From Macrostomum lignano (lineage: Eukaryota), in assembly GCA_002269645.1 (NCBI GenBank), contig NIVC01000823.1, forward strand, positions 1-52,934: DNA of 52,934 bases, in the 5' to 3' direction. The notes below the pieces were generated by a model, which was given only the letters and a program-made list of their open reading frames with translations, searched no databases and was not told the DNA's origin. The position numbers and the translations under genes are program-made. Below are positions 2,405-48,554 of the stretch, one piece after another; positions within the stretch are counted from its first letter, which is position 1, and each line of letters starts with the position of its first letter.

Positions 2405-3594
2405 TTAGTCATGTCGGTGACGAGGGCTGTAATCAGGACGCCGGTAATGTTGACGGTGTGATCTGTAATCAGGGCTTCGTTCGTGATGTCGGTGACGAGA
2501 TCTGTAATCAGGGCTTCGTTCGTGATGTCGGTGACGAGATCTGTAATCAGGGCTTCGTTCGTGATGTCGGTGCCGAGATCTGTAATCAGGGCTTCGTTCG
2601 TGATGTCGGTGACCAGATCTGTACTCAGGGCGTTGGTAATGTCGTCGACGTGATCTGTACTCAGGGCGTTGGTAATGTCGGCGACGAGATCTGTACTCAG
2701 GGCGCTGGTAATGTCGGTGACGAGATCTGTACTCAGGGCGTTGGTAATGTCGGCGACGAGATCTGTGGTCAGTATGACGGAATTCGACCTGAGGTATTTT
2801 ATCACTTTTGTTTTTATTCGTATGATCCATAGTCTTTGTTTGAGCTAATTGCTTAGCTATGACTTCAGAAGGTCGAATAATGGTCTTTTCTGGTGGCCGT
2901 GCAGCAGCAGCTGGTGGAGCAGTGGCTTCGGCTGGTAGAGCAGGGGCTTTAGCTGGCAGAGCAGGGGCTTTAGCTGGCAGAGCAGGGGCTTTAGCTGGCA
3001 GAGCAGGGGCTTTAGCTGGCAGAGCAGGGGCTTTAGCTGGCAGAGCAGGGGCTTTAGCTGGCAGAGCAGGGGCCTTAGCTGGCAGAGCAGGGGCTTTAGC
3101 TGGCAGAGCAGGGGCTTTAGCTGGCAGAGCAGGGGCTTTAGCTGGCAGAGCAGGGGCCTTAGCTGGCAGAGCAGGGGCCTTAGCTGGCAGAGCAGGGGCT
3201 TTAGCTGGCAGAGCAGGGGCTTTAGCTGGCAGAGCAAGGGCTTTAGCTGGCAGAGCAGGGGCCTTAGCTGGCAGAGCAGGGGCCTTAGCTGGCAGAGCAG
3301 GGGCTTTAGCTGGCAGAGCAGGGGCTTTAGCTGGCAGAGCAGGGCCTCAGCTGGGCGATGCACATTCTTGTTGGCTGAAGCTGCTGAAATCACAGTGCGA
3401 TTATTTACAAGCACGTGGAGCTGTTTAGCTGGTTTAACATGTTGTTGTAAACCATTTGCTGCGTTGCGGATGTCAGAACCATCACCAGCTGAGCCGGAGA
3501 TCCTACTTAACGGAGCCGAGTTGACACAGCTGGCAATGCACAGGATGATAAGATAAACACACAGGTGAGGTCTCTGCAGGACAGTCTGTGCCAT
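2405..3594 (-). CDS. Intronless secreted repeat protein A (about 396 aa after a +1 nt correction at 3342-3344): signal peptide, about 20x PAKAPAL, then Arg/His/Tyr-rich repeats
   Basis: ATG at 3594 gives MAQTVLQRPHLCVYLIILCIASCVNS-AP (signal-peptide-like). The last 21-bp unit has GGG where all others have GGGG. Restoring that base switches to the PAKAPAL frame, which runs with no stop through ATAPPAAAARPPEKTIIRPSEVIAKQLAQTKT into track ORF 2405-2830 (4x YQRPEYRSxxRH, 4x HERSPDYRSRHRH). The recurrent A/G variant between units is synonymous (AAA/AAG, Lys) in this frame but K/R in the LLCQLKP frame. Confidence 0.7.
2450..2770 (-). repeat. Coding 39-bp and 36-bp tandem repeats (Arg/His/Tyr-rich)
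   Basis: Four 39-bp and four 36-bp units read directly. Confidence 0.85.
2933..3352 (-). repeat. Coding 21-bp repeat, about 20 copies (PAKAPAL)
   Basis: GCAGGGGCTTTAGCTGGCAGA periodicity on the + strand. Confidence 0.9.
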
Positions 3595-4061
3595 GCTGTT
3601 TGGTTTCAACTTTTTTGTGTCGGAAAGAAGTTGTTTTTAGCGCACTTGTGAGCTGTGTTTTAAAACCTGTTTTTGTCTTGCCAAAATGGTTGAACGAAAG
3701 CTTTTAATTCGTGTCCCGATGGCACACAATGTCACGCAAACTAGCCATAAAATTTATTGTAGCTTGAGTCTGAAATTCGCATAACCAGCTGTGAATTCAT
3801 TTCTCATTGCTTTCTCTTTCAACAAAGTTTTTTGAAACTTTTCTCTGTTTGTTTCACCTCTGCAAAGCTATGATTACTGCACTTGCGTCACGTTCAGATT
3901 TCGGAGGTCGTTGCAAAAATCACCTGTTCGGCAATGAAAAATCCAAAGCAAAATCTTAACCTAAAAATAAAAACCTGACGAATTTCAGCCGGCTCAGCAT
4001 TGTCAAAGTTTTAATTGCAAGAGAGCCTTGTCAGCATTTGAAACTGTTTAACATCGAAAAG

Positions 4062-5117
4062 ATGAGATTTTTAAAGACAATTTCGTCCGTTTTACTGCTG
4101 AGTGTCGCAGCAGCAGCAGCTGCTGCTGTTGCAATCGACAGTGCATTTGACGATATCAGCAGCCAGTGGACGGCTGACTCAGGGTCGGCATCAAGGTGGG
4201 ACGAAGACTTCGAGAAAGAATTCAGCAATCGTTTTGGAATCTCTCGACCGAGGCGCTCGGACTCAGTGGAAAAGAGCGACGAGTTTAGGGTTGGAAAAGG
4301 GGCAGAGAAAAGGCCCGGCTTTAAAAACTGGAAGTTTGATGGCGAGACATCACGAAAGGGACGTCGCGAACACGGCAGACGCGAAGAAGAACGTCGCGAA
4401 CACGGCAGACGCGGAGAGGGACGTCGCGAACACGGCAGACGCGGAGAGGGACGTCGCCAACACGGCAGACGTGGAAAAGAACGTCGCGAACACGGCAGAC
4501 GAGGAGAGGGACGTCGCGAACATGACAGACGTGGAAAGGGACGTCGCGAACATGGCAAACGCGGAGAGGGACGTCGCGAACACGGCAGACGCGGAAAAGG
4601 ACATCGCCAACACAGCAGACGTGGAAAAGAACGTCGCGAACACGGCAGACGAGGAAAGGGACGTCGTGAACATGACAGACGTGGAAAGGGACGTCGCGAA
4701 CGCGGCAGACGAGGAGAGGGACGTCGCGAACATGACAGACGTGGAAAGGGACGTCGCGAACACGGAAGACGCGGAGAGGGACGTCGCAAACATGGCAGAC
4801 GCGAAGAGGAACGTCGTCGCGAACACGGCAGACGCGGAGAGGGACGTCGCGAACGCGGCAGACGCAGAAAGGGACGTCGCGAACACGGCAGACGTGGCGA
4901 GGGACGTCGCGAACAAGACATACGCGGAAAGGGACGTCGCGAACACGGCAGGCGCAGAGAGGGACGTCGCGAACACGAAAGACGTAGAAAGGGACGTCGC
5001 GGACATCAAGACCGAAATAGACACTACAGGCATGGAAACAGACATAATGAGCAGGGTCGATTTAAACCGGGCAAGAGACGCAATGGGCACAGAGAGGATT
5101 CAAGAACTCGCGAGTGA
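4062..5117 (+). CDS. Intronless secreted basic repeat protein B (351 aa): signal peptide, acidic segment, RPRR site, about 21x RREHGRRGEG
   Basis: ATG at 4062 gives [24 protein letters not shown] (signal-peptide-like). The frame is open to the stop at 5115-5117, with AATAAA at 5243-5248. Unit variants CGC/CGT/CGA are synonymous Arg in this frame but A/V/E in the alternative ANTADAERDV frame. Confidence 0.8.
   Translation: MRFLKTISSVLLLSVAAAAAAAVAIDSAFDDISSQWTADSGSASRWDEDFEKEFSNRFGISRPRRSDSVEKSDEFRVGKGAEKRPGFKNWKFDGETSRKGRREHGRREEERREHGRRGEGRREHGRRGEGRRQHGRRGKERREHGRRGEGRREHDRRGKGRREHGKRGEGRREHGRRGKGHRQHSRRGKERREHGRRGKGRREHDRRGKGRRERGRRGEGRREHDRRGKGRREHGRRGEGRRKHGRREEERRREHGRRGEGRRERGRRRKGRREHGRRGEGRREQDIRGKGRREHGRRREGRREHERRRKGRRGHQDRNRHYRHGNRHNEQGRFKPGKRRNGHREDSRTRE
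4358..5000 (+). repeat. Coding 30-bp repeat (RREHGRRGEG)
   Basis: GGACGTCGCGAACACGGCAGACGCGGAGAG periodicity. Confidence 0.9.
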
Positions 5118-5450
5118 ATGAATCTTGCGAAGGGCTCCGAAGTCAGTGACTTCTACAGGCCCACAATAGAGTTGAGTTTATGACACAATGATTTCGCAGG
5201 TGAAAGGGTGAACTTTTAAATTTACCTAATGTTTTATCAAATAATAAACGGAATGTTGACAAATCGATTTTAAATCTTTGATTCATCATCAGAACGATTA
5301 TAAGAGCTACATACTCGTGTATATTAACACTAGCACGGTTACCAAAGCAATAAGAGACAAATGAGAATGAACGATCAAAAGCGGATCACAGACAAGCATT
5401 AATTGTATTGGAGCAGCCAGTTCAATTCGAGTGCCAGTTAAAAGCTCGGA

Positions 5451-13550
<8,100 letters not shown>

Positions 13551-14557
13551 TTGCCACGTACATGAATTTAATCGGAATCGATTTTTCATTTTTTATCTTA
13601 AATAAGTATTCATTTGCGATTTAATATACCTTTTTGAATAAGCTTATTAAAAAGAATAGGTAATAAATAATACAGATGTTCTCAATAAATATATTTTTTA
13701 AATAAGTCTTTAAAGAAGTTTTATATCAAATTGCTAGTTTAATTTTTGGGATTTCTATAATTGTTGGATATTAAAATATAAATTAATTATCACACAATAG
13801 CTATGAACCTCATTTTATGCGAATCAATAGATTTTTAACTAGCATAAAAAACTCTGACAGTATGAACAACATAATATAAAACTGTGAATCACTATGTCCA
13901 ATTGAGAATTAGTAAATTTTTACTTTGCCTTTATTTCTACAATGTGTTATGCCAAGCAGTTAAGCAGGATGATAGATATGTTGTTTGATATTATTGGTTA
14001 ATCAAAATGGTTTTTGTAAAGAATGAAAGCTGGCGAAAAATAATTTTCTTTTTCTAAAATATTCTAATAAATGCATCATTAATTCATTATAAAATATATA
14101 TGAATTTATAAGTGCATGTATGCATCAACAATGCATTGTTGTGCTTTGTACAAATAGTTAAAGAAATTTTTCACGAATAGTATTTTCCTTGTGAAAAAAT
14201 ACACTATCATTAAACGTATCGTTCATTAGTTGCGATTCCATTTCAGAGAAATAATAAGTATGATATAAAGTATGAACTGATATATTAAAACTAGCTACGC
14301 TCGTATATTGAAATTTAATAACATCCGATGACTCAAACTGAACATGTGTCGTTTGCAGTAGATTCAGATGAACGAGGAATAATCTTTACTTGTGAATATG
14401 ACGTAATCTTTTAAAACAATCTAAAATTTCATTTAGAAAACAATATAAATATATTACTTTTTGTAGATTCGGAATTTTAGTTTTATTTTTCTTCGGTGTA
14501 GCGTTTCAGCAATCAGCGTTTCAGCAATCGGAGCTTTTGTTTCAAGTCACTTATGAA

Positions 14558-17249: not shown

Positions 17250-20200
17250 TCAGACGTGAGACATCTGGTTGCCAGCCGACTGCGGCAGCAGCGGCAGCGG
17301 CGGCTGCCCCGGGGCCTGGCTGAACTTGTAGTGCGACCGCGGGTCCCCAGTCAGGCTGACAGCAGCAGCCGACGCCGCCGCCTGCGCCTGTGCCGCAGCG
17401 CCGCCGCCAAGGACGAAGTGATGACCGCCAGCTGACGGGCGGCTGTAGGCTGCGCCGCCGCCACCGCCGCCACCGCCGCCGCCGCGGCCGGTGCAGCAGA
17501 ACAGGCGGCCAAGAAACTGACGCCAGGTGTGCAGAGTCTTGCCGGACCAGACCCACACCCCGCTGGTGATGCCAACGGCCAGCTGCATGAACTGGCGCAG
17601 CATGAACACGCCGTACTCCGGCTCCGCGGCGGGCTTCTCCCCCGGGCAGCGGCAGGCCTTGTCCTGCAGCCAGCGCTCACGCATCTGCGACTCGTAGAAA
17701 TGGCAGGCGATGACCACGGAGGCTGGCAGGGTGTACAGGATGGAGAAGATCCCGATGCGGATCATCAGCTTCTCCAGCTTGTAGGTCTTGGCGCTGGCCT
17801 GCTGCTTGATGACCGACCGGATGCGGAACAGGGCCACGAAGCCGGTGAGCAGGAAGACGCTGCCGATGAGCAGGTAGGTAACCAGGGGCAGCAGCACGAA
17901 CAGGCGCATGGCGGTGAGGTTCGTGTTGCCAACAGAGCAGATTCCGGAGATCGGGTCGCCGTCAACTAGGGAGAAGGTCAGGACCAGGATGAACTTCACG
18001 ATTGGCAGCACCCAGGCGATGCAGTGGAACACCTGCGGCGGGAGGTGGGAGTGGAGCTTTGAGTAATCGAGATTTTTTGACTGAATATTATTGGTTTGTC
18101 AACTGCAAGGTAAAAAAATATTTATTACTACTTTGTGCGAATTTTTGAGAATAAAAAACTGCCATCTGCTATCTTTTGCCCGCTCCTCTCCTCTCCTCTC
18201 CTCTCCTCTCCTCTCCTCTCCTCTCCTCTCCTCTCCTCTCCTCTCCTCTCCTCTCCTCTCCTCTCCTCTCCTCTCCTCTCCTCTCCTCTCCTCTCCTCTC
18301 CTCTCCTCTCCTCTCCTCTCCTCTCCTCTCCTCTCCTCTCCTCTCCTCTCCTCTCCTCTCCTCTCCTCTCCTCTCCTCTCCTCTCCTCTCCTCTCCTCTC
18401 CTCTCCTCTCCTCTCCTCTCCTCTCCTCTCCTCTCCTCTCCTCTCCTCTCCTCTCCTCTCCTCTCCTCTCCTCTCCTCTCCTCTCCTCTCCTCTCCTCTC
18501 CTCTCCTCTCCTCTCCTCTCCTCTCCTCTCCTCTCCTCTCCTCTCCTCTCCTCTCCTCTCCTCTCCTCTCCTCTCCTCTCCTCTCCTCTCCTCTCCTCTC
18601 CTCTCCTCTCCTCTCCTCTCCTCTCCTCTCCTCTCCTCTCCTCTCCTCTCTCCTCTCATCCTTTCCATTCCATCCCATCCCATTCTATCTGATCCAATCT
18701 GATCCAATCATTATCTCATCCCATCTCATCTCATCCCATCCCATCCCATCTCATCCCATCCCATCCCATCCCATCCCATCCTATCCCATCCCATCCCATC
18801 CCATCCCATCCCATCCCATCCCATCCCATCCCATCCCATCCCATCCCATCCCATCCCATCCCATCCCATCCCATCCCATCCTATCTCCTAATTCCCAGCC
18901 AAAGCATCGCCAAGCGCAGCCGCAGCGCTGCAGTCTCACCTCGCTGTACTTGGCGATGGCCTCGCTGCCCCACTTGAGCCCGGCCGCCAGGAACCAGGCC
19001 ACGCACAGCATGACCCACCACACACAGCTGGCCATGCCGAACAGGTAGGTCAGCAGGAACACCACGGTGCACAGCCACGGTCCAGACGATCCGTAGCGCA
19101 GCACCCGACCGTCGCAGGCGATGGTCTGCGGTCCCACGGCCAGGCGGACAATGTAACCAGCTGACACCATGACGTAACAGGCAGACAGCATCACAATGGG
19201 CCGCTCTGGATAGTTGAACCGCTTAGAGTTAATTAGAAAGGTGAGCACAGTAACGGTGGAACTGACGGCGCACAATATCGACCACATGCCGATCCAGACG
19301 CTCGCGAACTGCCGGTCACGATCCTTCTCGGAGAAGAACAGCCCCTCACAGGGCATGGCGCAGTTCGGTAGGCCGGCAGTGTACACCTTGTTGTAGTGTG
19401 CCTCGTTCTCCGTCAGCTGCACCAGCGGCGCCTGGCAGCGGCACTCGCAGGAGGCCGGCGCCGAGCCGTATGAGGTGTCCGTGTCTGGTGGCAGCGTGGT
19501 GACCGGCTGCGAGGTGCTCGTGTGGTTGACGTCCATGCACAGCGTGTCAGGATCGCCGTAGTCTGCGGTGGAGAGACAGGACACTGTTGGGGTGGTGCTG
19601 CCTTACTGCTGTTGGGTCATGGTTATCCCCGGTGGGTCAGGATTCTGTCCAATGGGTCAGGGTTCTCTCCAATGGGTCATGGTTATCACCAATGGGTCAG
19701 GGTTCTCTCCAATGAGTCATGGTTATCACCAATGGGTCAGGGTTCTCTCCAATGAGTCATGGTTATCACCAATGGGTCAGGGTTCTCTCCAATGGGTCAT
19801 GGTATATCACCAATGGGTCAGGGTTCTCTCCAATGAGTCATGGCTATCACCAATGGGTCAGGGTTCTCTCCAATGGGTCATGGTATATCACCAATGGGTC
19901 AGGGTTCCCTCCAATGGGTCATGGTTATCACCGGCGGGTCAGAGTTCTCTCAAATGGGTCATGGTTATCACCAATGGGTCAGGGTTCTCTCCAATGGGTC
20001 ATGGTTATCACCGGCGGGTCGGGGTTCTCTCCAATGGGTCATGGTTATCACCAATGGGTCAGGGTTCTCTCCAATGAGTCATGGTTATCACCAATGGGTC
20101 AGGGTTCTCTCCAATGGGTCATGGTATATCACCAATGGGTCAGGGTTCTCTCCAATGAGTCATGGTATATCACCAATGGGTCAGGGTTCCCTCCAATGGG

Positions 20201-39148: not shown

Positions 39149-42100
39149 TCAGTCAAAATAGTCGTCAATGTCAACTCCGGGGTCAAGCAGATGCTCGCCA
39201 AACTGGCTGAGATCCAGCTGGTTGAGAATGAGATTCTCAAATGTCTCCTCAAGATCTGTCTCGCCAATAAGCACGCAGCCCTGTATTCGGCCGTTGCGCA
39301 TGACGCACTTCACGTACTCGACGCCTGGGGTCACACGAAGCAGCGCCTCGTATTCGCCGCTGGCCAAGCCTTGTGCGTTGTACAGGCCTGACAATTGGCG
39401 GGGGGCGAATTTCATACTGACTACTGACAGTAGCGTATAGGCATGAAAGCAAAACTGCAGGTGTCGCTTTGGAAACGTTTGCCGCAACCAGAAATCATTT
39501 GGCGCTAATATAAACCATTTGGCGCTAATATGAACCATTTGGCGCTAATAGAAACCATTTGGCGCTAATATGAACCATTTGGCGCTAATATGAACCATTT
39601 GGCGCTAATACAAACCATTTGGCGCTAATATAAACCATTTGGCGCTAATATGAACCATTTGGCGCTAATATAAACCATTTAGCGCTAATAGAAACCACTT
39701 GGCGCTAATATAAACCATTTGGCGCAAATATAAACCATTTGGCGCTAATATAAACCATTTAGCGCTAATAGAAACCATTTTGCGCTAATATGAACAATTT
39801 GGCGCTAATATAAACCATTTGGCGCTAATAGAAACCATTTTGCGCTAATATGAACCATTTGGCGCTAATATAAACCATTTGGCGCTAATAGAAACCATTT
39901 GGCGCTAATATAAACCATTTGGCGCTAATATAAACCATTTGGCGCTAATATGAACCATTTGGCGCTAATATAAACCATTTGGCGCAAATATAAACCATTT
40001 GGCGCTAATATAAACCATTTAGCGCTAATAGAAACCATTTTGCGCTAATATGAACCATTTGGCGCTAATATAAACCATTTGGCGCTAATAGAAACAATTT
40101 GGCGCTAATATAAACCATTTGGCGCTAATAAAAACCATTTTGCGCTAATATGAACCATTTGGCGCTAATATAAACCATTTGGCGCTAATAGAAACCATTT
40201 GGCGCTAATATAAACCATTTGGCGCTAATAGAAACCATTTGGCGCTAATATGAACCATTTGGCGCTAATATAAACCATTTGGCGGTAATATAAACCATTT
40301 AGCACTAATATAAACCATTTGGCGCTAATATAAACCATTTGGCGATAATATAAACCATTTGGCGCTAATATGAACCATTTGGCGCTAATATAAACCATTT
40401 GGCGCAAATATAAACCATTTGGCGCTAATATAAACCATTTAGCGCTAATAGAAACCATTTGGCGCTAATATGAACCATTTGGCGCTAATTTAAACCATTT
40501 GGCGCTAATATAAACCATTTGGCGCTAATATAAACCATTTGGCGCTAATAGAAACCATTTGGCGCTAATATGAACCATTTGGCGCTAATATAAACCATTT
40601 GGCGGTAATATAAACCATTTAGCGCTAATATAAACCATTTAGCGCTAATAGAAACCATTTTGCGCTAATATGAACCATTTGGCGCTAATATAAACCATTT
40701 GGCGCTAATAGAAACAATTTGGCGCTAATATAAACCATTTGGCGCTAATAGAAACCATTTTGCGCTAATATGAACCATTTGGCGCTAATATAAACCATTT
40801 GGCGCTAATAGAAACCATTTGGCGCTAATATAAACCATTTGGCGCTAATATAAACCATTTGGCGCTAATATGAACCATTTGGCGCTAATATAAACCATTT
40901 GGCGGTAATATAAACCATTTAGCACTAATATGAACCATTTGGCGCTAATATAAACCATTTGGCGATAATATAAACCATTTGGCGCTAATATGAACAATTT
41001 GGCGCTAATATAAACCATTTGGCGCAAATATAAACCATTTGGCGCTAATATAAACCATTTAGCGCTAATAGAAACCATTTGGCGCTAATATGAACCATTT
41101 GGCGCTAATTTAAACCATTTGGCGCTAATATAAACCATTTGGCGCTAATATAAACCATTTGGCGCTAATAGAAACCATTTGGCGCTAATATGAACCATTT
41201 GGCGCTAATATAAACCATTTGGCGGTAATATAAACCATTTAGCGCTAATAGAAACTATTTGGCGCTAATATAAACGATTTAGCGCTAATATAAACCATTT
41301 GGCGCTAATAGAAACCATTTGGCGCTAATATAAACCATTTGGCGCTAATATAAACCATTTGGCACTAATTAAAACCATTTAGCGCTAATAGAAACAATTT
41401 GGTGTCAATAGAAAATAGTTGGCGTTACATAAAAGACAGCAAAGCACAGGCAGTGAGGCGCCGTGGGAGGCAGTGAGGCGCTGTGGGAGGCAGTGAGGCG
41501 CCGTGGGAGGCCAGCATGGCTGGGCAAGAAGCGAACACGACAGCGGCGAGCGACTCACCCAGCAGCACGATCTTGTAGCTGAAAAACCGGGTGACGTGGG
41601 TGAACAGCTCGAAGCCGATGTCCAGCGGAGGCGGTGACTCGCCCCGCCTGGCCGCCGACATGCAGCGGGCGGCAAACGAGCCGGTCTGGCGCGCCTGCGA
41701 CCACAGGCGCATCTGAAACCACAGCCGCGTCTCCTCCGCCGCCGAGGAAGTCTCGCCGTCGGACGACCAACCGGCGCAGCCGCAAGCGTCACCGGCGGCG
41801 AACACGTGCGCCAAGGAGCTGCGCATGCCGCGGTCGACGGCCACGGCGCCCTCAGCATCCAGCGCCGGACCGACGCCGCCGTCGGCCAGCAGGGCGGTCG
41901 GCGTCACTCCGGTTGCGCTGACGATCAAATCGACGCCCAGCAGTTCGCCGTTGCTGAGCGCGGCGAACACCGGCCAAGAATCGGTCGGAGCGGTGGTGTC
42001 GGTCGGGAGCAGCTCGGCGGCCTCCTTGGGGCTCAGAAGGCTGACGACCTCCACCGAGTAGATTATTCGAGTCTCCGCGGCGTCGCCTGCCGACGTCGCC

Positions 42101-44178
42101 GCTGTCGCTGCCGGTGCAGCTGTCGGTGCCCATGCCGATGCCGATGACGGTGCCGGTGTCGATGCCGATGTTGGTGTTAATGTCGGTGCTGATGGCAGTG
42201 CCGATGTCGGTGCCGATGTTAGTGTCGCTGCCGATGTCGGTGCTGATGTCGGTGCTGACGTCGGTGCCGATGTCGGTGCCGATGCTGGTGTCGCTGTCGA
42301 TGTCGGTGTTTCTGCCGACCTCGACGATGCACCGACGCAGCCGCTAAGTTTAAAGCCGCTCGACCAGTCGGGGCCAAGGGCGCTTCCGGGAAACTGCTGA
42401 CGCATCTGTTGCTGCTCTTGCTGCCTCTGCTGCTTAAGCGGGGGAGGGGCCGAGTCCTCGGCAAGTTGGAATCTGCAAAGGACCGAAAGGAAGCCGATAA
42501 ATATTAAAAAGCCCCACCGTCTCCATTCCCTGACACCCCACCGTCTCCATTCCCTGACACCCCACCGTCTCCATTCCCTGACACCCCACCGTCTCCATTC
42601 CCTGACACCCCACCGTCTCCATCCCCCTGACGCCCCGACCGTCACCTCCGATGCTTAGTCACGCCGGGCTTGTCGACCCTCACGCCGCCAGGCCGCGCCA
42701 GACTGGGCAGCAGGAACTGGGCGGCGCCGGCGTCAAAGAACACGGCTCCGATGGAGTCCTGGCGAACCGCCCACACGACGTCGACGTTGCGCAACTCGTA
42801 GACCAGCTCGGTGGCGATGCCGCCGTTGCCAACGACAAGGACGCGTCGACACGTCGACAACTTCTTGGACAGGTCGGCCACTGTCTCAGTGTCGCGAATG
42901 CCCACAACCAGATCCGGGTGCTGCCGGGCCTGCGGAATCAGCTTCGGCGAAGCGCCGGTGCACAGGCACAGCTCGCCGTAGCCGATCCTGACCTCGGCAG
43001 CTTCGCCGGCTGCTGACGGCTCCGGATTGGCCAGCGAGGCGCGGAGCTGCCGAGTCTCCGCGTTGAAACCGGTGCAGCTGGCGTGCAGGACGCTAACGCT
43101 GCCGCAGCCGCTTCGCTGACGCTGCTGCCGCTGGAACTCGGCTAGCGGCCGCTCCTGGGATGGTCGGTGAGGTGTCAGTTGAGTCGGTGAGGTGTCAGCA
43201 GAGTCAATGGGGTGTCAGTAGAGACAGTGAGGTGTCAGTTGAGTCAGTGGGGTGTCAGTTGAGTCAGTGAGGTGTCAGTTGAGTCAGTGGGGTGTCAGTT
43301 GAGTCAGTGAGGTGTCAGTTGAGTCAGTGGGGTGTCAGTTGAGTCGTTGAGGTGTCAGCAGAGTCAGTGAGGTGTCAGTTGAGTCAGTGGGGTGTCAGTT
43401 GAGTCGGTGAGGTGTCAGTTGAGTCAGTGAGGTGTCAGTTGAGTCAGTGGGGTGTCAGTTGAGTCAGTGAGGTGTCAGTTGAGTCAGTGGGGTGTCAGTT
43501 GAGTCAGTGAGGTGTCAGTTGAGTCAGTGAGGTGTCAGTTGAGTCAGTGAGGTGTCAGTTGAGTCAGTTAGGTGTCAGTTGAGTCAGTGGGGTGTCAGCA
43601 GAGTCAGTGGGGTGTCAGCAGAGTCAATGGGGTGTCAGCAGAGTCAATGGGGTGTCAGCAGAGTCAGTGAGGTGTCAGCAGAGTCAATGGGGTGTTAGCA
43701 GAGTCAGTGGGGTGTCAGCAGAGTCAGTGGGGTGTCAGCAGAGTCAATGGGGTGTCAGCAGAGTCAATGGGGTGTCAGCAGAGTCAATGGGGTGTCAGCA
43801 GAGTCAATGGGGTGTCAGCAGAGTCAATGGGGTGTCAGTAGAGACAATGGGGTGTTAGCAGAGTCAATGGGGTGTCAGTAGAGACAATGGGGTGTCAGTA
43901 GAGACAGCAATCCAAAAAAGACCCGCCCTCAGCCGATAAACCTCAACGTCGAACTCTTCCAGCAGTTTGGTGACGGGCCGCAGGTTGGTGACGGCTTTGA
44001 CCACAGGCGAGGCGGACACAATCAGCACCCGGGCGTCCGGCTCCACCGCTGCCAGGGTCTCCGCGCAGGTGACACCGGCAATGCCGCCGCCCACAATGAC
44101 AAAGTCGTATTGGTGCTCGGCCGCCAGAAAACGGGCGAGGTTTGCCTCGCTGTCAGAGCAACTGTTGAATGCCACTTG
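39149..44178 (-). CDS. PYROXD1: Pyridine nucleotide-disulphide oxidoreductase domain-containing protein 1; exons 43942-about 44178, 42646-43154, 41559-42472, 39149-39387 (5' end unresolved)
   Basis: Collinear matches to remembered human PYROXD1: [157 protein letters not shown]. Junction phases 0,2,1 are consistent. Confidence 0.95.
39495..41400. repeat. 20-bp minisatellite (GGCGCTAATATAAACCATTT)n with a 620-bp higher-order duplication (intronic)
   Basis: Read directly. The variant order at 40281-40500 recurs at 40901-41120. Confidence 0.96.
42515..42640. repeat. 24-bp minisatellite (CCCCACCGTCTCCATTCCCTGACA), about 5 copies, filling the 173-nt intron 42473-42645
   Basis: Read directly. Confidence 0.9.
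43165..43905. repeat. 20-bp minisatellite (GGTGTCAGTTGAGTCAGTGA)n filling intron 43155-43941
   Basis: Read directly. Confidence 0.95.
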
Positions 44179-47314: not shown

Positions 47315-47720
<406 letters not shown>

Positions 47721-48554
47721 CCCTTGCTCTGAACAGAATTTACTTTCGCCGCACGCATACAGATGGAAAAGCGCCGTTGCTGTACAAAGCCAAAAGCAAC
47801 TTATCCAGCCACGTTTTCTTTTCAGTCTCAAAGGCGCCACAGAGACATCAAAGGCGCTCAGCTCGCACCTGCGTTATCAAAAGCTACAACAGCGGCAGCA
47901 GCGGCAGGCTGGAAACAGAATAGCATAATAATTACTCTGTTTATATAAAATCTGCTGTCACTCTCCTCTCCATCGAAAATATGATGAAGGTGCGTCGAAC
48001 AGATTTTTGTTTCTTTAGAGAAAAAGCATCGCCCTCCTCCTGTCTTTCTTTATGCTCGCTCGCTTGCCCGAGCTGGGAGGAAAGCGAAAGGCGAGCGGGG
48101 CTCCCAGAGGGCCAGAGAGGGAGGCTCGCAGCATCTCTTGCTCTCTCACTGCGACTGCCTTCTGGGCAATGTACTTAACAGATCGACAAAGCCTGAAATC
48201 TCTGCTCTTTGCTCTACTTCGTCTCTTGCCTCTAACCCCTCATCCACCTGACCTGCTCTCTCAGCTGGGATTTTCCCGTGTCCCGCCAGCTGCCCGAATC
48301 AGTTAGCAATTTTACTTGCACGGCGAACCGGATTAGATAAAAAATGGGAGGAAAAGATAAACAAACCACTCAGCTTGTCTCTAGCAGGTTGCTATTTAAC
48401 AATCTTTTTTCTTTGCTAATTGAGAAACCTGAGCAACAGGTGACACAGGTAACGGTTAAGAGGCTTTCTAATCTTATCGGCACAGATAATTTAGCTTAAT
48501 ATATTTGAAAATTGATGTAGAATTTGTGAAGTTTGAGAAGATTATGTAGAGGTC

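What the first reader, a model, noticed from the sequence alone, without database searches (positions are those of the whole stretch)
2405..5117. Head-to-head pair of intronless, secreted, Arg/His-rich repeat proteins: candidate biomaterial or secretory-granule module
Seen: two divergent single-exon ORFs with ATGs only 467 bp apart. Each has a signal-peptide-like N-terminus and a strongly basic His/Arg repeat domain (A: YQRPEYRSRRRH / HERSPDYRSRHRH; B: RREHGRRGEG). The repeat sequences are unrelated, yet the compositions converge. The neighbouring genes are intron-rich. Known: His/Tyr/Lys/Arg-rich repeat proteins are typical of invertebrate glues, egg capsules and metal-crosslinked materials (mussel foot proteins; the K/R-rich Macrostomum adhesive protein ap1). 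Inference: a co-regulated two-component secretion (adhesive, rhabdite, eggshell or antimicrobial). I recognise no known family for either protein.
Basis: partly seen in the sequence, partly recalled or inferred. Interest (0 to 1): 0.75.

Follow-up and report, generated by a model that had tools for sequence, protein, structure and literature searches.

The report
Two orphan secreted basic repeat-protein genes
Two neighbouring back-to-back genes in an animal genome full of tandem repeats seem to encode small secreted, unstructured, very positively charged repeat proteins with no known relatives; one is intact, the other is broken by one missing base, and what they do is unproven.

Summary
The locus is real, but it was described loosely. 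Gene B (4062-5117, +) is an intact 351-aa ORF: a signal-peptide-like start, 74 unique residues, 21 copies of EGRREHGRRG and a basic tail. Gene A (minus strand, ATG 3594) is not one ORF. The signal-peptide frame ends at 2857. One base missing from a G-run (3342-3344) separates the two frames.

Evidence for real coding:
- The unique segments are open only in the proposed frames.
- Only A, B and a Frizzled membrane helix have signal-peptide-like starts among 116 ATG-ORFs.
- All three repeat periods are multiples of 3, and both internal length changes are 3 nt.
- The unique segments show weak 3-base periodicity; non-coding controls show none.

Evidence against:
- 47% of the window is tandem arrays, which create long ORFs routinely.
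- GC3 is 0.29-0.50, against 0.65-0.88 in the conserved neighbours.
- There are no homologues and no transcript data.

Best reading: two lineage-restricted genes for secreted, disordered polycations. The glue, eggshell or antimicrobial role is untested. This is a new member of a known kind, of modest interest.

The parts
4062..5117 (+). Gene B: intact ORF of 351 aa plus stop. First ATG of the ORF, with A at -3.
4062..4133 (+). B signal-peptide-like segment [24 protein letters not shown], with a predicted AVA|ID cleavage. The hydrophobic core is long (about 19 aa), so a signal anchor is not excluded.
   Evidence: heuristic; helix with pLDDT about 70-74
4134..4355 (+). B unique region of 74 aa. 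The first 33 aa are acidic (net -6), the rest basic (net +5).
   Evidence: The N-terminal segment 4062-4355 that contains it (signal peptide included) is open only in this sense frame, P(open) 0.002.
4356..5018 (+). B coding minisatellite: 21 units of 30 nt, consensus EGRREHGRRG, with one in-frame 3-nt (Arg codon) insertion in the unit that starts at 4806.
5019..5117 (+). B non-repeat basic tail (RHYRHGNRHNEQGRFKPGKRRNGHREDSRTRE) and stop codon.
5243..5248 (+). AATAAA, a candidate polyadenylation signal 126 nt after the B stop codon.
3595..4061 (.). 467-bp AT-rich (38% GC) spacer between the two ATGs, a candidate shared or bidirectional promoter. TATA-like runs lie near 3961-3975 (for B) and 3655-3667 (for A). 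This is inferred from reading the sequence and was not tested.
3347..3594 (-). Gene A 5' part: ATG at 3594 (A at -3, G at +4), signal-peptide-like MAQTVLQRPHLCVYLIILCIASCVNS (3517-3594), then 56 unique residues ending ...NVHRPA.
3342..3344 (.). Frame break in gene A. The first unit of the 21-nt array has GGG on the + strand where every other unit has GGGG. Adding one base joins the signal-peptide frame to the PAKAPAL/basic frame (...HRPAEAPALPAKAPAL...).
2894..3343 (-). 21-nt array: about 20 units reading PAKAPAL in the frame continuous with the basic repeats, and LLCQLKP in the literal signal-peptide frame.
   Evidence: In the PAKAPAL frame, 6 variant codons are synonymous and 1 is not.
2857..2859 (-). 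Stop codon of the literal signal-peptide frame (245-aa product ending ...LFDLLKS).
2768..2893 (-). A unique linker of 42 aa (PEKTIIRPSEVIAKQLAQTKTMDHTNKNKSDKIPQVEFRHTD).
   Evidence: Open only in this sense frame, P(open) 0.05.
2405..2767 (-). A basic Arg/His/Tyr block: 4 x 36 nt (YRSRRRHYQRPE), 4 x 39 nt (YRSRHRHHERSPD), a degenerate end and the stop codon at 2405-2407. The two unit types differ by an in-frame 3-nt indel.

Best explanation
The locus holds two adjacent, divergently oriented, lineage-restricted protein-coding genes that share a 467-bp spacer. Each encodes a signal peptide followed by an intrinsically disordered, strongly cationic protein. Most of each protein's length was built by in-frame minisatellite expansion.

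B is a 351-aa Arg/Gly/Glu/His polyampholyte with net charge +67. An acidic stretch follows its signal peptide.

A, once a one-base gap in a G-run is filled, is a roughly 396-aa block protein. It consists of a signal peptide, 58 unique residues, (PAKAPAL)x20 as a Pro/Ala/Lys spacer, a 42-aa linker and a 120-aa Arg/His/Tyr block. In this assembly A is frame-broken. That is either a homopolymer error or a true null allele.

Inferred mechanism (not shown): after secretion the Arg/His blocks bind polyanions such as sulfated glycans, phosphoproteins or microbial surfaces. A's Arg-Tyr block could add cation-pi cohesion or oxidative Tyr/His cross-linking, and the Lys in each PAKAPAL heptad offers cross-link sites. 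That would suit an extracellular cement, coat or granule-matrix role.

Shown: ORF structure, signal-peptide-like starts, composition, and absence of relatives. Inferred: transcription, secretion, co-regulation and function.

The confidence given is for 'genuine genes encoding secreted basic repeat proteins'. Confidence in the specific material or adhesive role is about 0.25-0.3.
For: - The unique, non-repeat segments are open only in the proposed sense frame. P(open | shuffle) is 0.002, 0.02, 0.05 and 0.2.
- Signal-peptide-like N-termini occur only in A, B and a Frizzled membrane helix among 116 ATG-ORFs.
- All three array periods (36/39, 21 and 30 nt) are multiples of 3, against 6 of 30 arrays elsewhere.
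- Both internal length changes are 3 nt.
- Variant codons lean synonymous in the proposed frames: PAKAPAL 6:1; basic block 4:3 against 2:5 and 1:6 in the other frames; B 20:34, the best of the three frames, with no stops.
- The unique segments show 3-base periodicity with G enriched at codon position 1 (p = 0.0013). Five non-coding controls show none.
- Start contexts are good and AATAAA lies downstream of B.
- B has no predicted fold: mean pLDDT 52, pTM 0.21.
- No known family was found.
Against: - No transcript, proteome or orthologue evidence exists.
- 47% of the window is tandem arrays, and long ORFs across arrays are routine here.
- GC at third codon positions is 0.29-0.50 in every A/B segment, against 0.65-0.88 in the Frizzled, PYROXD1 and DUF4551 exons. 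In each array the proposed frame is the one with the lowest GC3.
- Gene A is not intact as sequenced.
- CpG transitions account for many of B's 'synonymous' changes.
- T depletion at codon position 1 partly follows from having selected open frames.
- The signal-peptide test is a home-made heuristic, not SignalP.
Confidence: 0.6

Rival explanations
1. Non-coding minisatellites with accidental ORFs. Three intergenic tandem arrays happen to be open in several frames and happen to abut ATG-initiated hydrophobic stretches. Nothing is translated.
For: - 39 arrays cover 47% of the window.
- Arrays in introns also give ORFs of 300-540 aa.
- The B array is open in 2 sense and 2 antisense frames.
- GC3 of A and B sits near the non-coding background and far from the conserved genes.
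- A is frameshifted.
- No homologues were found anywhere.
Against: - Unique flanks are open only in the proposed frame, with a joint probability well below 1e-4.
- Two of two candidates are signal-peptide-like against a background of about 2%.
- Three of three periods are divisible by 3, and indels are in frame.
- 3-base periodicity is present in the unique segments and absent in the controls.
Confidence: 0.2
2. The literal reading of gene A is the true one. A1 is a 245-aa secreted Leu/Cys-rich heptad protein (LLCQLKP x 21) ending at 2857. The Arg/His/Tyr ORF downstream is then either 3' UTR or a separate 141-aa product from ATG 2830 without a signal peptide. In that case only B is a secreted basic repeat protein.
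For: - This is what the sequence encodes as given.
- In this frame the array has GC3 of about 0.87, like the conserved genes (derived).
- The commonest variant is a conservative K/R change, and one variant is synonymous in this frame.
- AlphaFold models the array as a helix with pLDDT 74-82.
Against: - The other frame stays open for 312 codons through a unique linker and a second array, with no ATG for its first 171 codons. This is what a continuation of an upstream ORF would look like.
- The partial first unit upstream of the gap is read as PAEA, which is the PAKAPAL register.
- The gap is one base in a homopolymer.
- The N-terminal unique part of the same ORF has GC3 of 0.44, so the high array GC3 may be coincidence.
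- A 140-residue helix with Pro every 7 residues is physically doubtful, and pTM is only 0.23.
Confidence: 0.25
3. Gene A contains a short intron that joins the signal-peptide exon to the PAKAPAL/basic frame. It would then be intact, but not single-exon.
For: 94 GT..AG combinations give an uninterrupted product. One example is donor 3506 (TTAA|GTAGGA), just after the predicted signal-peptide cleavage site, with acceptor 3346.
Against: - No polypyrimidine tract lies before the candidate acceptors.
- The introns seen in neighbouring genes here are 0.7-3 kb and filled with arrays.
- The one-base homopolymer difference explains the shift more simply.
Confidence: 0.1
4. B (and perhaps A) is a precursor that is cut into small cationic peptides at its many dibasic sites, giving antimicrobial or neuropeptide-like products. 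The acidic stretch after the signal peptide would neutralise the cationic part during transport, as in defensin- or silaffin-type precursors.
For: - The layout is signal peptide, then an acidic 33-aa stretch (net -6), then a cationic repeat domain.
- Every 10-aa unit has two RR pairs, many of them preceded by Gly. From general knowledge, GRR/GKR is the usual cleavage-plus-amidation signal.
Against: Cutting at every RR would leave only di- and tripeptides (EH, GEG), which are too small for known bioactive classes. No conserved peptide core is flanked by cleavage sites. No homologue exists.
Confidence: 0.08
5. The products are intracellular Arg-rich proteins (SR-like, RGG-like or protamine-like). 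The hydrophobic N-termini are not signal peptides.
For: Motifs such as RSRRRH, RSRHRH and RRGEG resemble RS and RGG low-complexity regions. This is a resemblance from general knowledge only.
Against: No RRM or other intracellular domain was found in Pfam. Both N-termini fit the n/h/c signal-peptide layout. PDB sequence searches found no real match.
Confidence: 0.03

Closest known systems
Secreted repetitive low-complexity proteins of invertebrate biomaterials (general class: mussel foot proteins, sandcastle-worm cement proteins, shell-matrix and eggshell precursors). The comparison rests on general knowledge.
   Same: Signal peptide followed by short tandem peptide repeats encoded by coding minisatellites. 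High pI, with Lys/Arg/His/Tyr/Pro/Gly-rich composition. No folded domain, few or no introns, rapid evolution and no homologues outside a narrow lineage.
   Different: No sequence similarity to any of them. B has no Tyr at all in its repeats, and Arg rather than Lys is the main cation. Tissue of expression and any DOPA or phospho-modification are unknown.
[quoted passage not shown]
   Same: Extremely cationic K/R-rich repeat regions in a secreted protein that has no database homologues. The positive charge is used to bind negatively charged partners.
   Different: Mlig-ap1 is very large. [quoted passage not shown] A and B are 350-400 aa, have no Pfam domain, are rich in His, Glu and Gly, and show no motif similarity to the KR peptide SRKPRRKNRKSRKP.
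Diatom silaffin-type and cationic antimicrobial-peptide-type precursors (general knowledge)
   Same: The order is signal peptide, acidic pro-region, then repeated cationic units rich in dibasic sites.
   Different: Those precursors release defined peptides of 15-40 aa. B's units would be cut into 2-3-residue pieces. The composition is Arg/Gly/Glu/His rather than Lys/Ser. There is no homology.
Lamprey buccal-gland protein Lj-RGD3 (PMC5027299, PMC6409697)
   Same: A small His- and Arg-rich secretory-gland protein.
   Different: Lj-RGD3 is 14.5 kDa with three RGD motifs. B has RGE/RGK and no RGD. The window is unlikely to be vertebrate, because at least 140 aa of PYROXD1 lie in one exon.

Membership tests
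Secreted coding-minisatellite (repetitive low-complexity) proteins: general kind | N-terminal signal peptide | tested here: met
   An n/h/c-region heuristic accepts A and B and only one other of 116 ORFs. SignalP was not available.
Secreted coding-minisatellite (repetitive low-complexity) proteins: general kind | Repeat period divisible by 3 and frame-preserving length variation | tested here: met
   Periods are 21, 30 and 36/39 nt. The two internal indels are both 3 nt. Background arrays: 6 of 30 divisible by 3. Exception: a 1-nt gap at the edge of the 21-nt array (3342-3344).
Secreted coding-minisatellite (repetitive low-complexity) proteins: general kind | Transcribed and translated | not testable with these tools
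   No RNA or proteome data were available. None of 10 window ORFs is in the protein collection, so it does not appear to hold this genome.
DOPA/Tyr-based adhesive proteins (mussel foot protein type) | High Tyr (about 10-30%) next to Lys/Arg/Pro in the repeats | tested here: inconclusive
   A's basic block has 11.7% Tyr in RPEYRS/SPDYRS contexts. The B array shows no Tyr among its eight commonest residues or in any printed repeat unit.
DOPA/Tyr-based adhesive proteins (mussel foot protein type) | Expression in an adhesive gland and post-translational DOPA | not testable with these tools
   Needs in situ hybridisation and protein chemistry.
Mlig-ap1-type flatworm adhesive | Very long KR regions plus a central block of trypsin-inhibitor-like and EGF-like folded domains | tested here: not met
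   A and B are 351-396 aa with no Pfam domain. Mlig-ap1 features are taken from PMC6410801.
SR / RS-domain or RGG RNA-binding proteins (intracellular) | RRM or other RNA-binding domain, and no signal peptide | tested here: not met
   Pfam gave no match at E <= 0.01. Signal-peptide-like N-termini are present.
Histidine-rich glycoprotein / histatin-type His-rich proteins | Cystatin-like domains (HRG) or short His-rich peptides of about 24-38 aa (histatins) | tested here: not met
   No Pfam or PDB match. His is only 7% of each whole mature protein.
RNA polymerase II CTD-like heptads | YSPTSPS consensus heptads | tested here: not met
   PDB hits of PAKAPAL to the RPB1 CTD are a period-7 Pro-rich artefact. 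A non-coding intronic 21-nt array gives the same hits.

The most novel reading that the evidence does not exclude
A and B are evolutionarily young genes born in place. Minisatellites with periods divisible by 3 expanded on either side of one short AT-rich promoter region. They captured ATG-plus-hydrophobic starts and so created two new secreted polycations.

Their third codon positions still carry the background base composition (GC3 0.29-0.50). Old genes in the same window have GC3 of 0.65-0.88. The one-base break in A would then be a gene flickering between alleles. A genome that is about 47% tandem arrays would be an unusually good place to watch repeat-driven gene birth.
Probability: 0.2. 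Interest if true: 0.55.

Novelty: new member of a known kind. Interest (0 to 1): 0.3.

Why it matters
If expressed, these would be two more lineage-specific secreted polycationic repeat proteins. Animals use this class for glues, coats, eggshells and antimicrobial defence, and materials scientists mine it. The Arg/Tyr/His block of A and the Arg/Gly/Glu block of B have sticker-type compositions relevant to phase separation and wet adhesion.

The contrast between their background-like codon third positions and the strongly GC3-biased old genes next door makes the locus a possible case of gene origin from minisatellites. Without expression data it remains a well-formed candidate, not a discovery.

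Tried and rejected
- **Large homology searches failed.** The search for homologous proteins timed out five times: full-length B, B N-terminus, B without signal peptide, A N-terminus, and a Frizzled exon. A's unique parts and the organism's identity therefore could not be searched there.
- **B N-terminus against 1.84 billion representatives.** phmmer gave one hit, E = 6e-4. It is a bacterial Ig-repeat protein that shares only 'IESAFDD'. Rejected as spurious.
- **Exact look-ups.** None of 10 window ORFs, nor B itself, is on record. The collection does not appear to hold this genome, so the missing self-hit says nothing about expression.
- **Metagenome scans.** The A and B N-termini have no relatives.
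- **Literature search for the repeat motifs.** Nothing relevant was found.
- **Lamprey Lj-RGD3 lead.** Not pursued further. The PYROXD1 exon structure argues against a vertebrate, and the Lj-RGD3 sequence is not in the text.
- **Organism identity.** The FZD5/8-like CRD exon closely matches human FZD5/8 (about 78% identity by my count of the alignment). The PYROXD1-like match to human is weaker (about 55% by my count). Together with the intron pattern this indicates a non-vertebrate animal. A macrostomid flatworm fits the few introns, GC-rich coding and high repeat load, but was not verified (one search gave no usable sequences).
- **Paralogy or inverted duplication of A and B.** Rejected.
- **Structure prediction to choose between the two A frames.** Not decisive.
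- **Bacterial promoter/terminator scanner.** Not used, because the window is eukaryotic.
Full report
**Setting.** The 52.9-kb window is from an animal genome. It carries three recognisable genes:
- A Frizzled-5/8-like gene. The Fz domain lies at 22631-23062 and the 7TM halves at 18781-19584 and 17250-18032, all on the minus strand.
- A PYROXD1-like gene in several pieces between 39149 and 44223, minus strand.
- The last exon of a DUF4551 (C12orf56-like) gene at about 5454-5690, minus strand.

Thirty-nine tandem arrays cover 47% of the window. They generate ORFs of up to 546 aa in introns. A long ORF over a repeat is therefore no evidence of a gene here, and the finding must be judged on other grounds.

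**What is at 2405-5117.**

Gene B is exactly as described. Its first ATG is at 4062, with A at -3 and an in-frame stop 27 nt upstream. The ORF runs to a stop at 5115-5117 and encodes 351 aa. Its parts are:
- a 24-aa signal-peptide-like start;
- 74 unique residues, acidic first (net -6 over 33 aa) and then basic;
- 21 units of 30 nt with consensus EGRREHGRRG, including one inserted Arg codon;
- a basic tail.

AATAAA follows 126 nt after the stop.

Gene A starts at ATG 3594 on the minus strand, with A at -3 and G at +4. It has a 26-aa signal-peptide-like start.

It is not one ORF, however. The start frame reads a 21-nt array as LLCQLKP and stops at 2857. That frame reads the same 21-nt array as about 20 PAKAPAL heptads. 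A 42-aa unique linker follows, then 4 x YRSRRRHYQRPE and 4 x YRSRHRHHERSPD.

The two frames meet at the first array unit. There the + strand has GGG (3342-3344) where all other units have GGGG. One added base gives ...NVHRPAEAPALPAKAPAL..., a seamless 396-aa protein. Many GT..AG pairs could also bridge the frames, so an intron is not excluded.

**Is it coding or chance?**

For coding:
- The four non-repeat segments are each open only in the proposed sense frame. The other sense frames hold 2-6 stops, except the short B tail, where a second sense frame is also open. The probability of being open after shuffling is 0.002, 0.02, 0.05 and 0.2.
- A simple signal-peptide heuristic applied to all 116 ATG-ORFs of 50 aa or more picks only A, B and an internal Frizzled membrane helix. 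Shuffled sequence gives about 2%.
- All three arrays have periods divisible by 3, against 6 of 30 arrays elsewhere in the window. One of those six is itself inside the PYROXD1 coding exon.
- The two internal length changes are both 3 nt.
- Variant codons lean synonymous in the proposed frames: 6:1 for PAKAPAL; 4:3 for the basic block against 2:5 and 1:6 in the other frames; 20:34 for B, the best of three frames and without stops.
- Concatenated unique segments show 3-base periodicity (chi-square p = 0.0013) with G enriched at codon position 1. Five non-coding control stretches show none.

Against coding:
- Third-position GC is 0.29-0.50 in every A/B segment. The Frizzled, PYROXD1 and DUF4551 exons have 0.65-0.88, and unique non-coding DNA here is 0.25-0.40 GC.
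- In each array the proposed frame is the one with the lowest GC3.
- Many of B's synonymous changes are CpG transitions.
- Part of the periodicity follows from having chosen open frames.
- A is broken as sequenced, and there are no transcripts, peptides or orthologues.

I put the probability that these are genuine genes at about 0.6-0.65. The alternative of non-coding arrays gets about 0.2.

**Relatives.** None were found:
- Pfam gives nothing for A or B.
- PDB sequences give nothing for B.
- For A, PDB gives only period-7 matches of PAKAPAL to the RNA polymerase II CTD. An intronic non-coding 21-nt array produces the same matches, so this is an artefact.
- phmmer of B's first 101 residues against 1.84 billion representatives returned one spurious bacterial hit.
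- Degenerate-pattern scans of JGI metagenome contigs found no relative of either N-terminus.
- None of 10 window ORFs is present in the protein collection. The source genome is apparently not held, so the negatives say 'no relatives in other sequenced taxa', not 'not expressed'.
- A and B are unrelated to each other in their unique parts. They are not an inverted duplication and have no copies elsewhere in the window.

**What the products would be.**
- Mature B: about 40 kDa, pI about 11.9, net charge +67, with R 33%, G 18%, E 14% and H 7%.
- Mature repaired A: about 41 kDa, pI about 11.4, net charge +51.
- A's C-terminal 120 aa are R 33%, H 18%, Y 12% and S 12%.
- AlphaFold without an alignment gives B a mean pLDDT of 52 and pTM of 0.21, meaning no stable fold.
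- The literal LLCQLKP reading of A is drawn as one long helix (pLDDT 74-82, pTM 0.23). With a proline every seventh residue this is not persuasive either way.

**Likely mechanism (inferred).** These are secreted, disordered polycations that act by multivalent electrostatic binding to polyanions.
- A looks like a block polymer. A Pro/Ala/Lys spacer carries one Lys per heptad, and an Arg/Tyr/His end block has a composition suited to cation-pi cohesion, metal binding and quinone- or His-type cross-linking.
- B is an Arg/Gly/Glu polyampholyte preceded by an acidic stretch. That layout is also seen in precursors of cationic peptides.
- Both are cationic, so they are not a complementary charge pair. 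Any 'two-component' action would need an anionic third partner.
- A precursor role with cleavage at the many RR sites is possible. It would, however, yield only 2-3-residue fragments, so I rate it low.

**Comparison with known systems.** The closest known kind is the broad class of secreted repetitive low-complexity proteins of invertebrate glues, coats and shells.
It is very large, with KR regions above 3,600 aa and folded trypsin-inhibitor-like and EGF-like domains (PMC6410801). A and B are not members of that family.
- No defining feature of SR proteins, histatins/HRG, silaffins or protamines is met (see the membership table).

**Organism.** Not identified.
- The FZD5/8-like CRD exon is about 78% identical to human FZD5/8 by my count of the alignment. 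The PYROXD1-like match is about 55% by my count.
- The Frizzled gene has coding introns. At least 140 aa of PYROXD1 lie in one exon, whereas human PYROXD1 is split into small exons (general knowledge). Both points argue for a non-vertebrate animal.

**Verdict.** Co-regulation and function are untested. This is a new member of a known kind, of modest interest. The most novel reading still open is recent gene birth from minisatellites, suggested by the background-like third codon positions.

Noticed in passing
window 42098-42309 (within ORF 41425-42645, minus strand): The PYROXD1-like gene carries an in-frame tandem array (periods 12-66 nt). It encodes about 110 residues of Ala/Pro/Thr/Ser-rich low-complexity sequence between two segments that align to human PYROXD1 (human residues 221-251 and 290-429). 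So a coding minisatellite sits inside a conserved enzyme gene.
   Followed up: partly
window 17250-23062, minus strand: A Frizzled-5/8-like gene is split by introns of about 0.75 and 3.3 kb. These are almost wholly filled with tandem arrays: (CTCCT)n, (CCATC)n, a 40-mer x 44 and a 21-mer x 34. Its C-terminal tail has runs of Gly and Ala and ends in ...MSHV.
   Followed up: partly
whole window: 39 tandem arrays (units of 4-84 nt, many about 1 kb long) cover 47% of the sequence. Conserved exons have GC3 of 0.65-0.88, while the unique non-coding DNA between them is only 25-40% GC. This is a sharp exon/non-exon contrast in composition.
   Followed up: partly
window 5454-5690, minus strand (and possibly 13029-13589, minus strand): The last exon of a DUF4551 (C12orf56-like) gene ends 334 bp from the stop of gene B, tail to tail. 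The 186-aa ORF at 13029-13589 (GC3 0.70, no Pfam hit) may be an upstream exon of the same gene.
   Followed up: no
window 47652-47721, minus strand: A weak Rfam tRNA match (30.9 bits, gathering score 29) that ARAGORN does not call. It could be a degenerate tRNA or a tRNA-derived repeat.
   Followed up: no
window 2695-2706 (minus strand) versus 4362-4373 (plus strand), as examples: The A basic unit and the B unit share a CGTCGC-NNN-CAY core (Arg-Arg-x-His) in the same reading frame. It is too short to tell shared origin from convergence.
   Followed up: no
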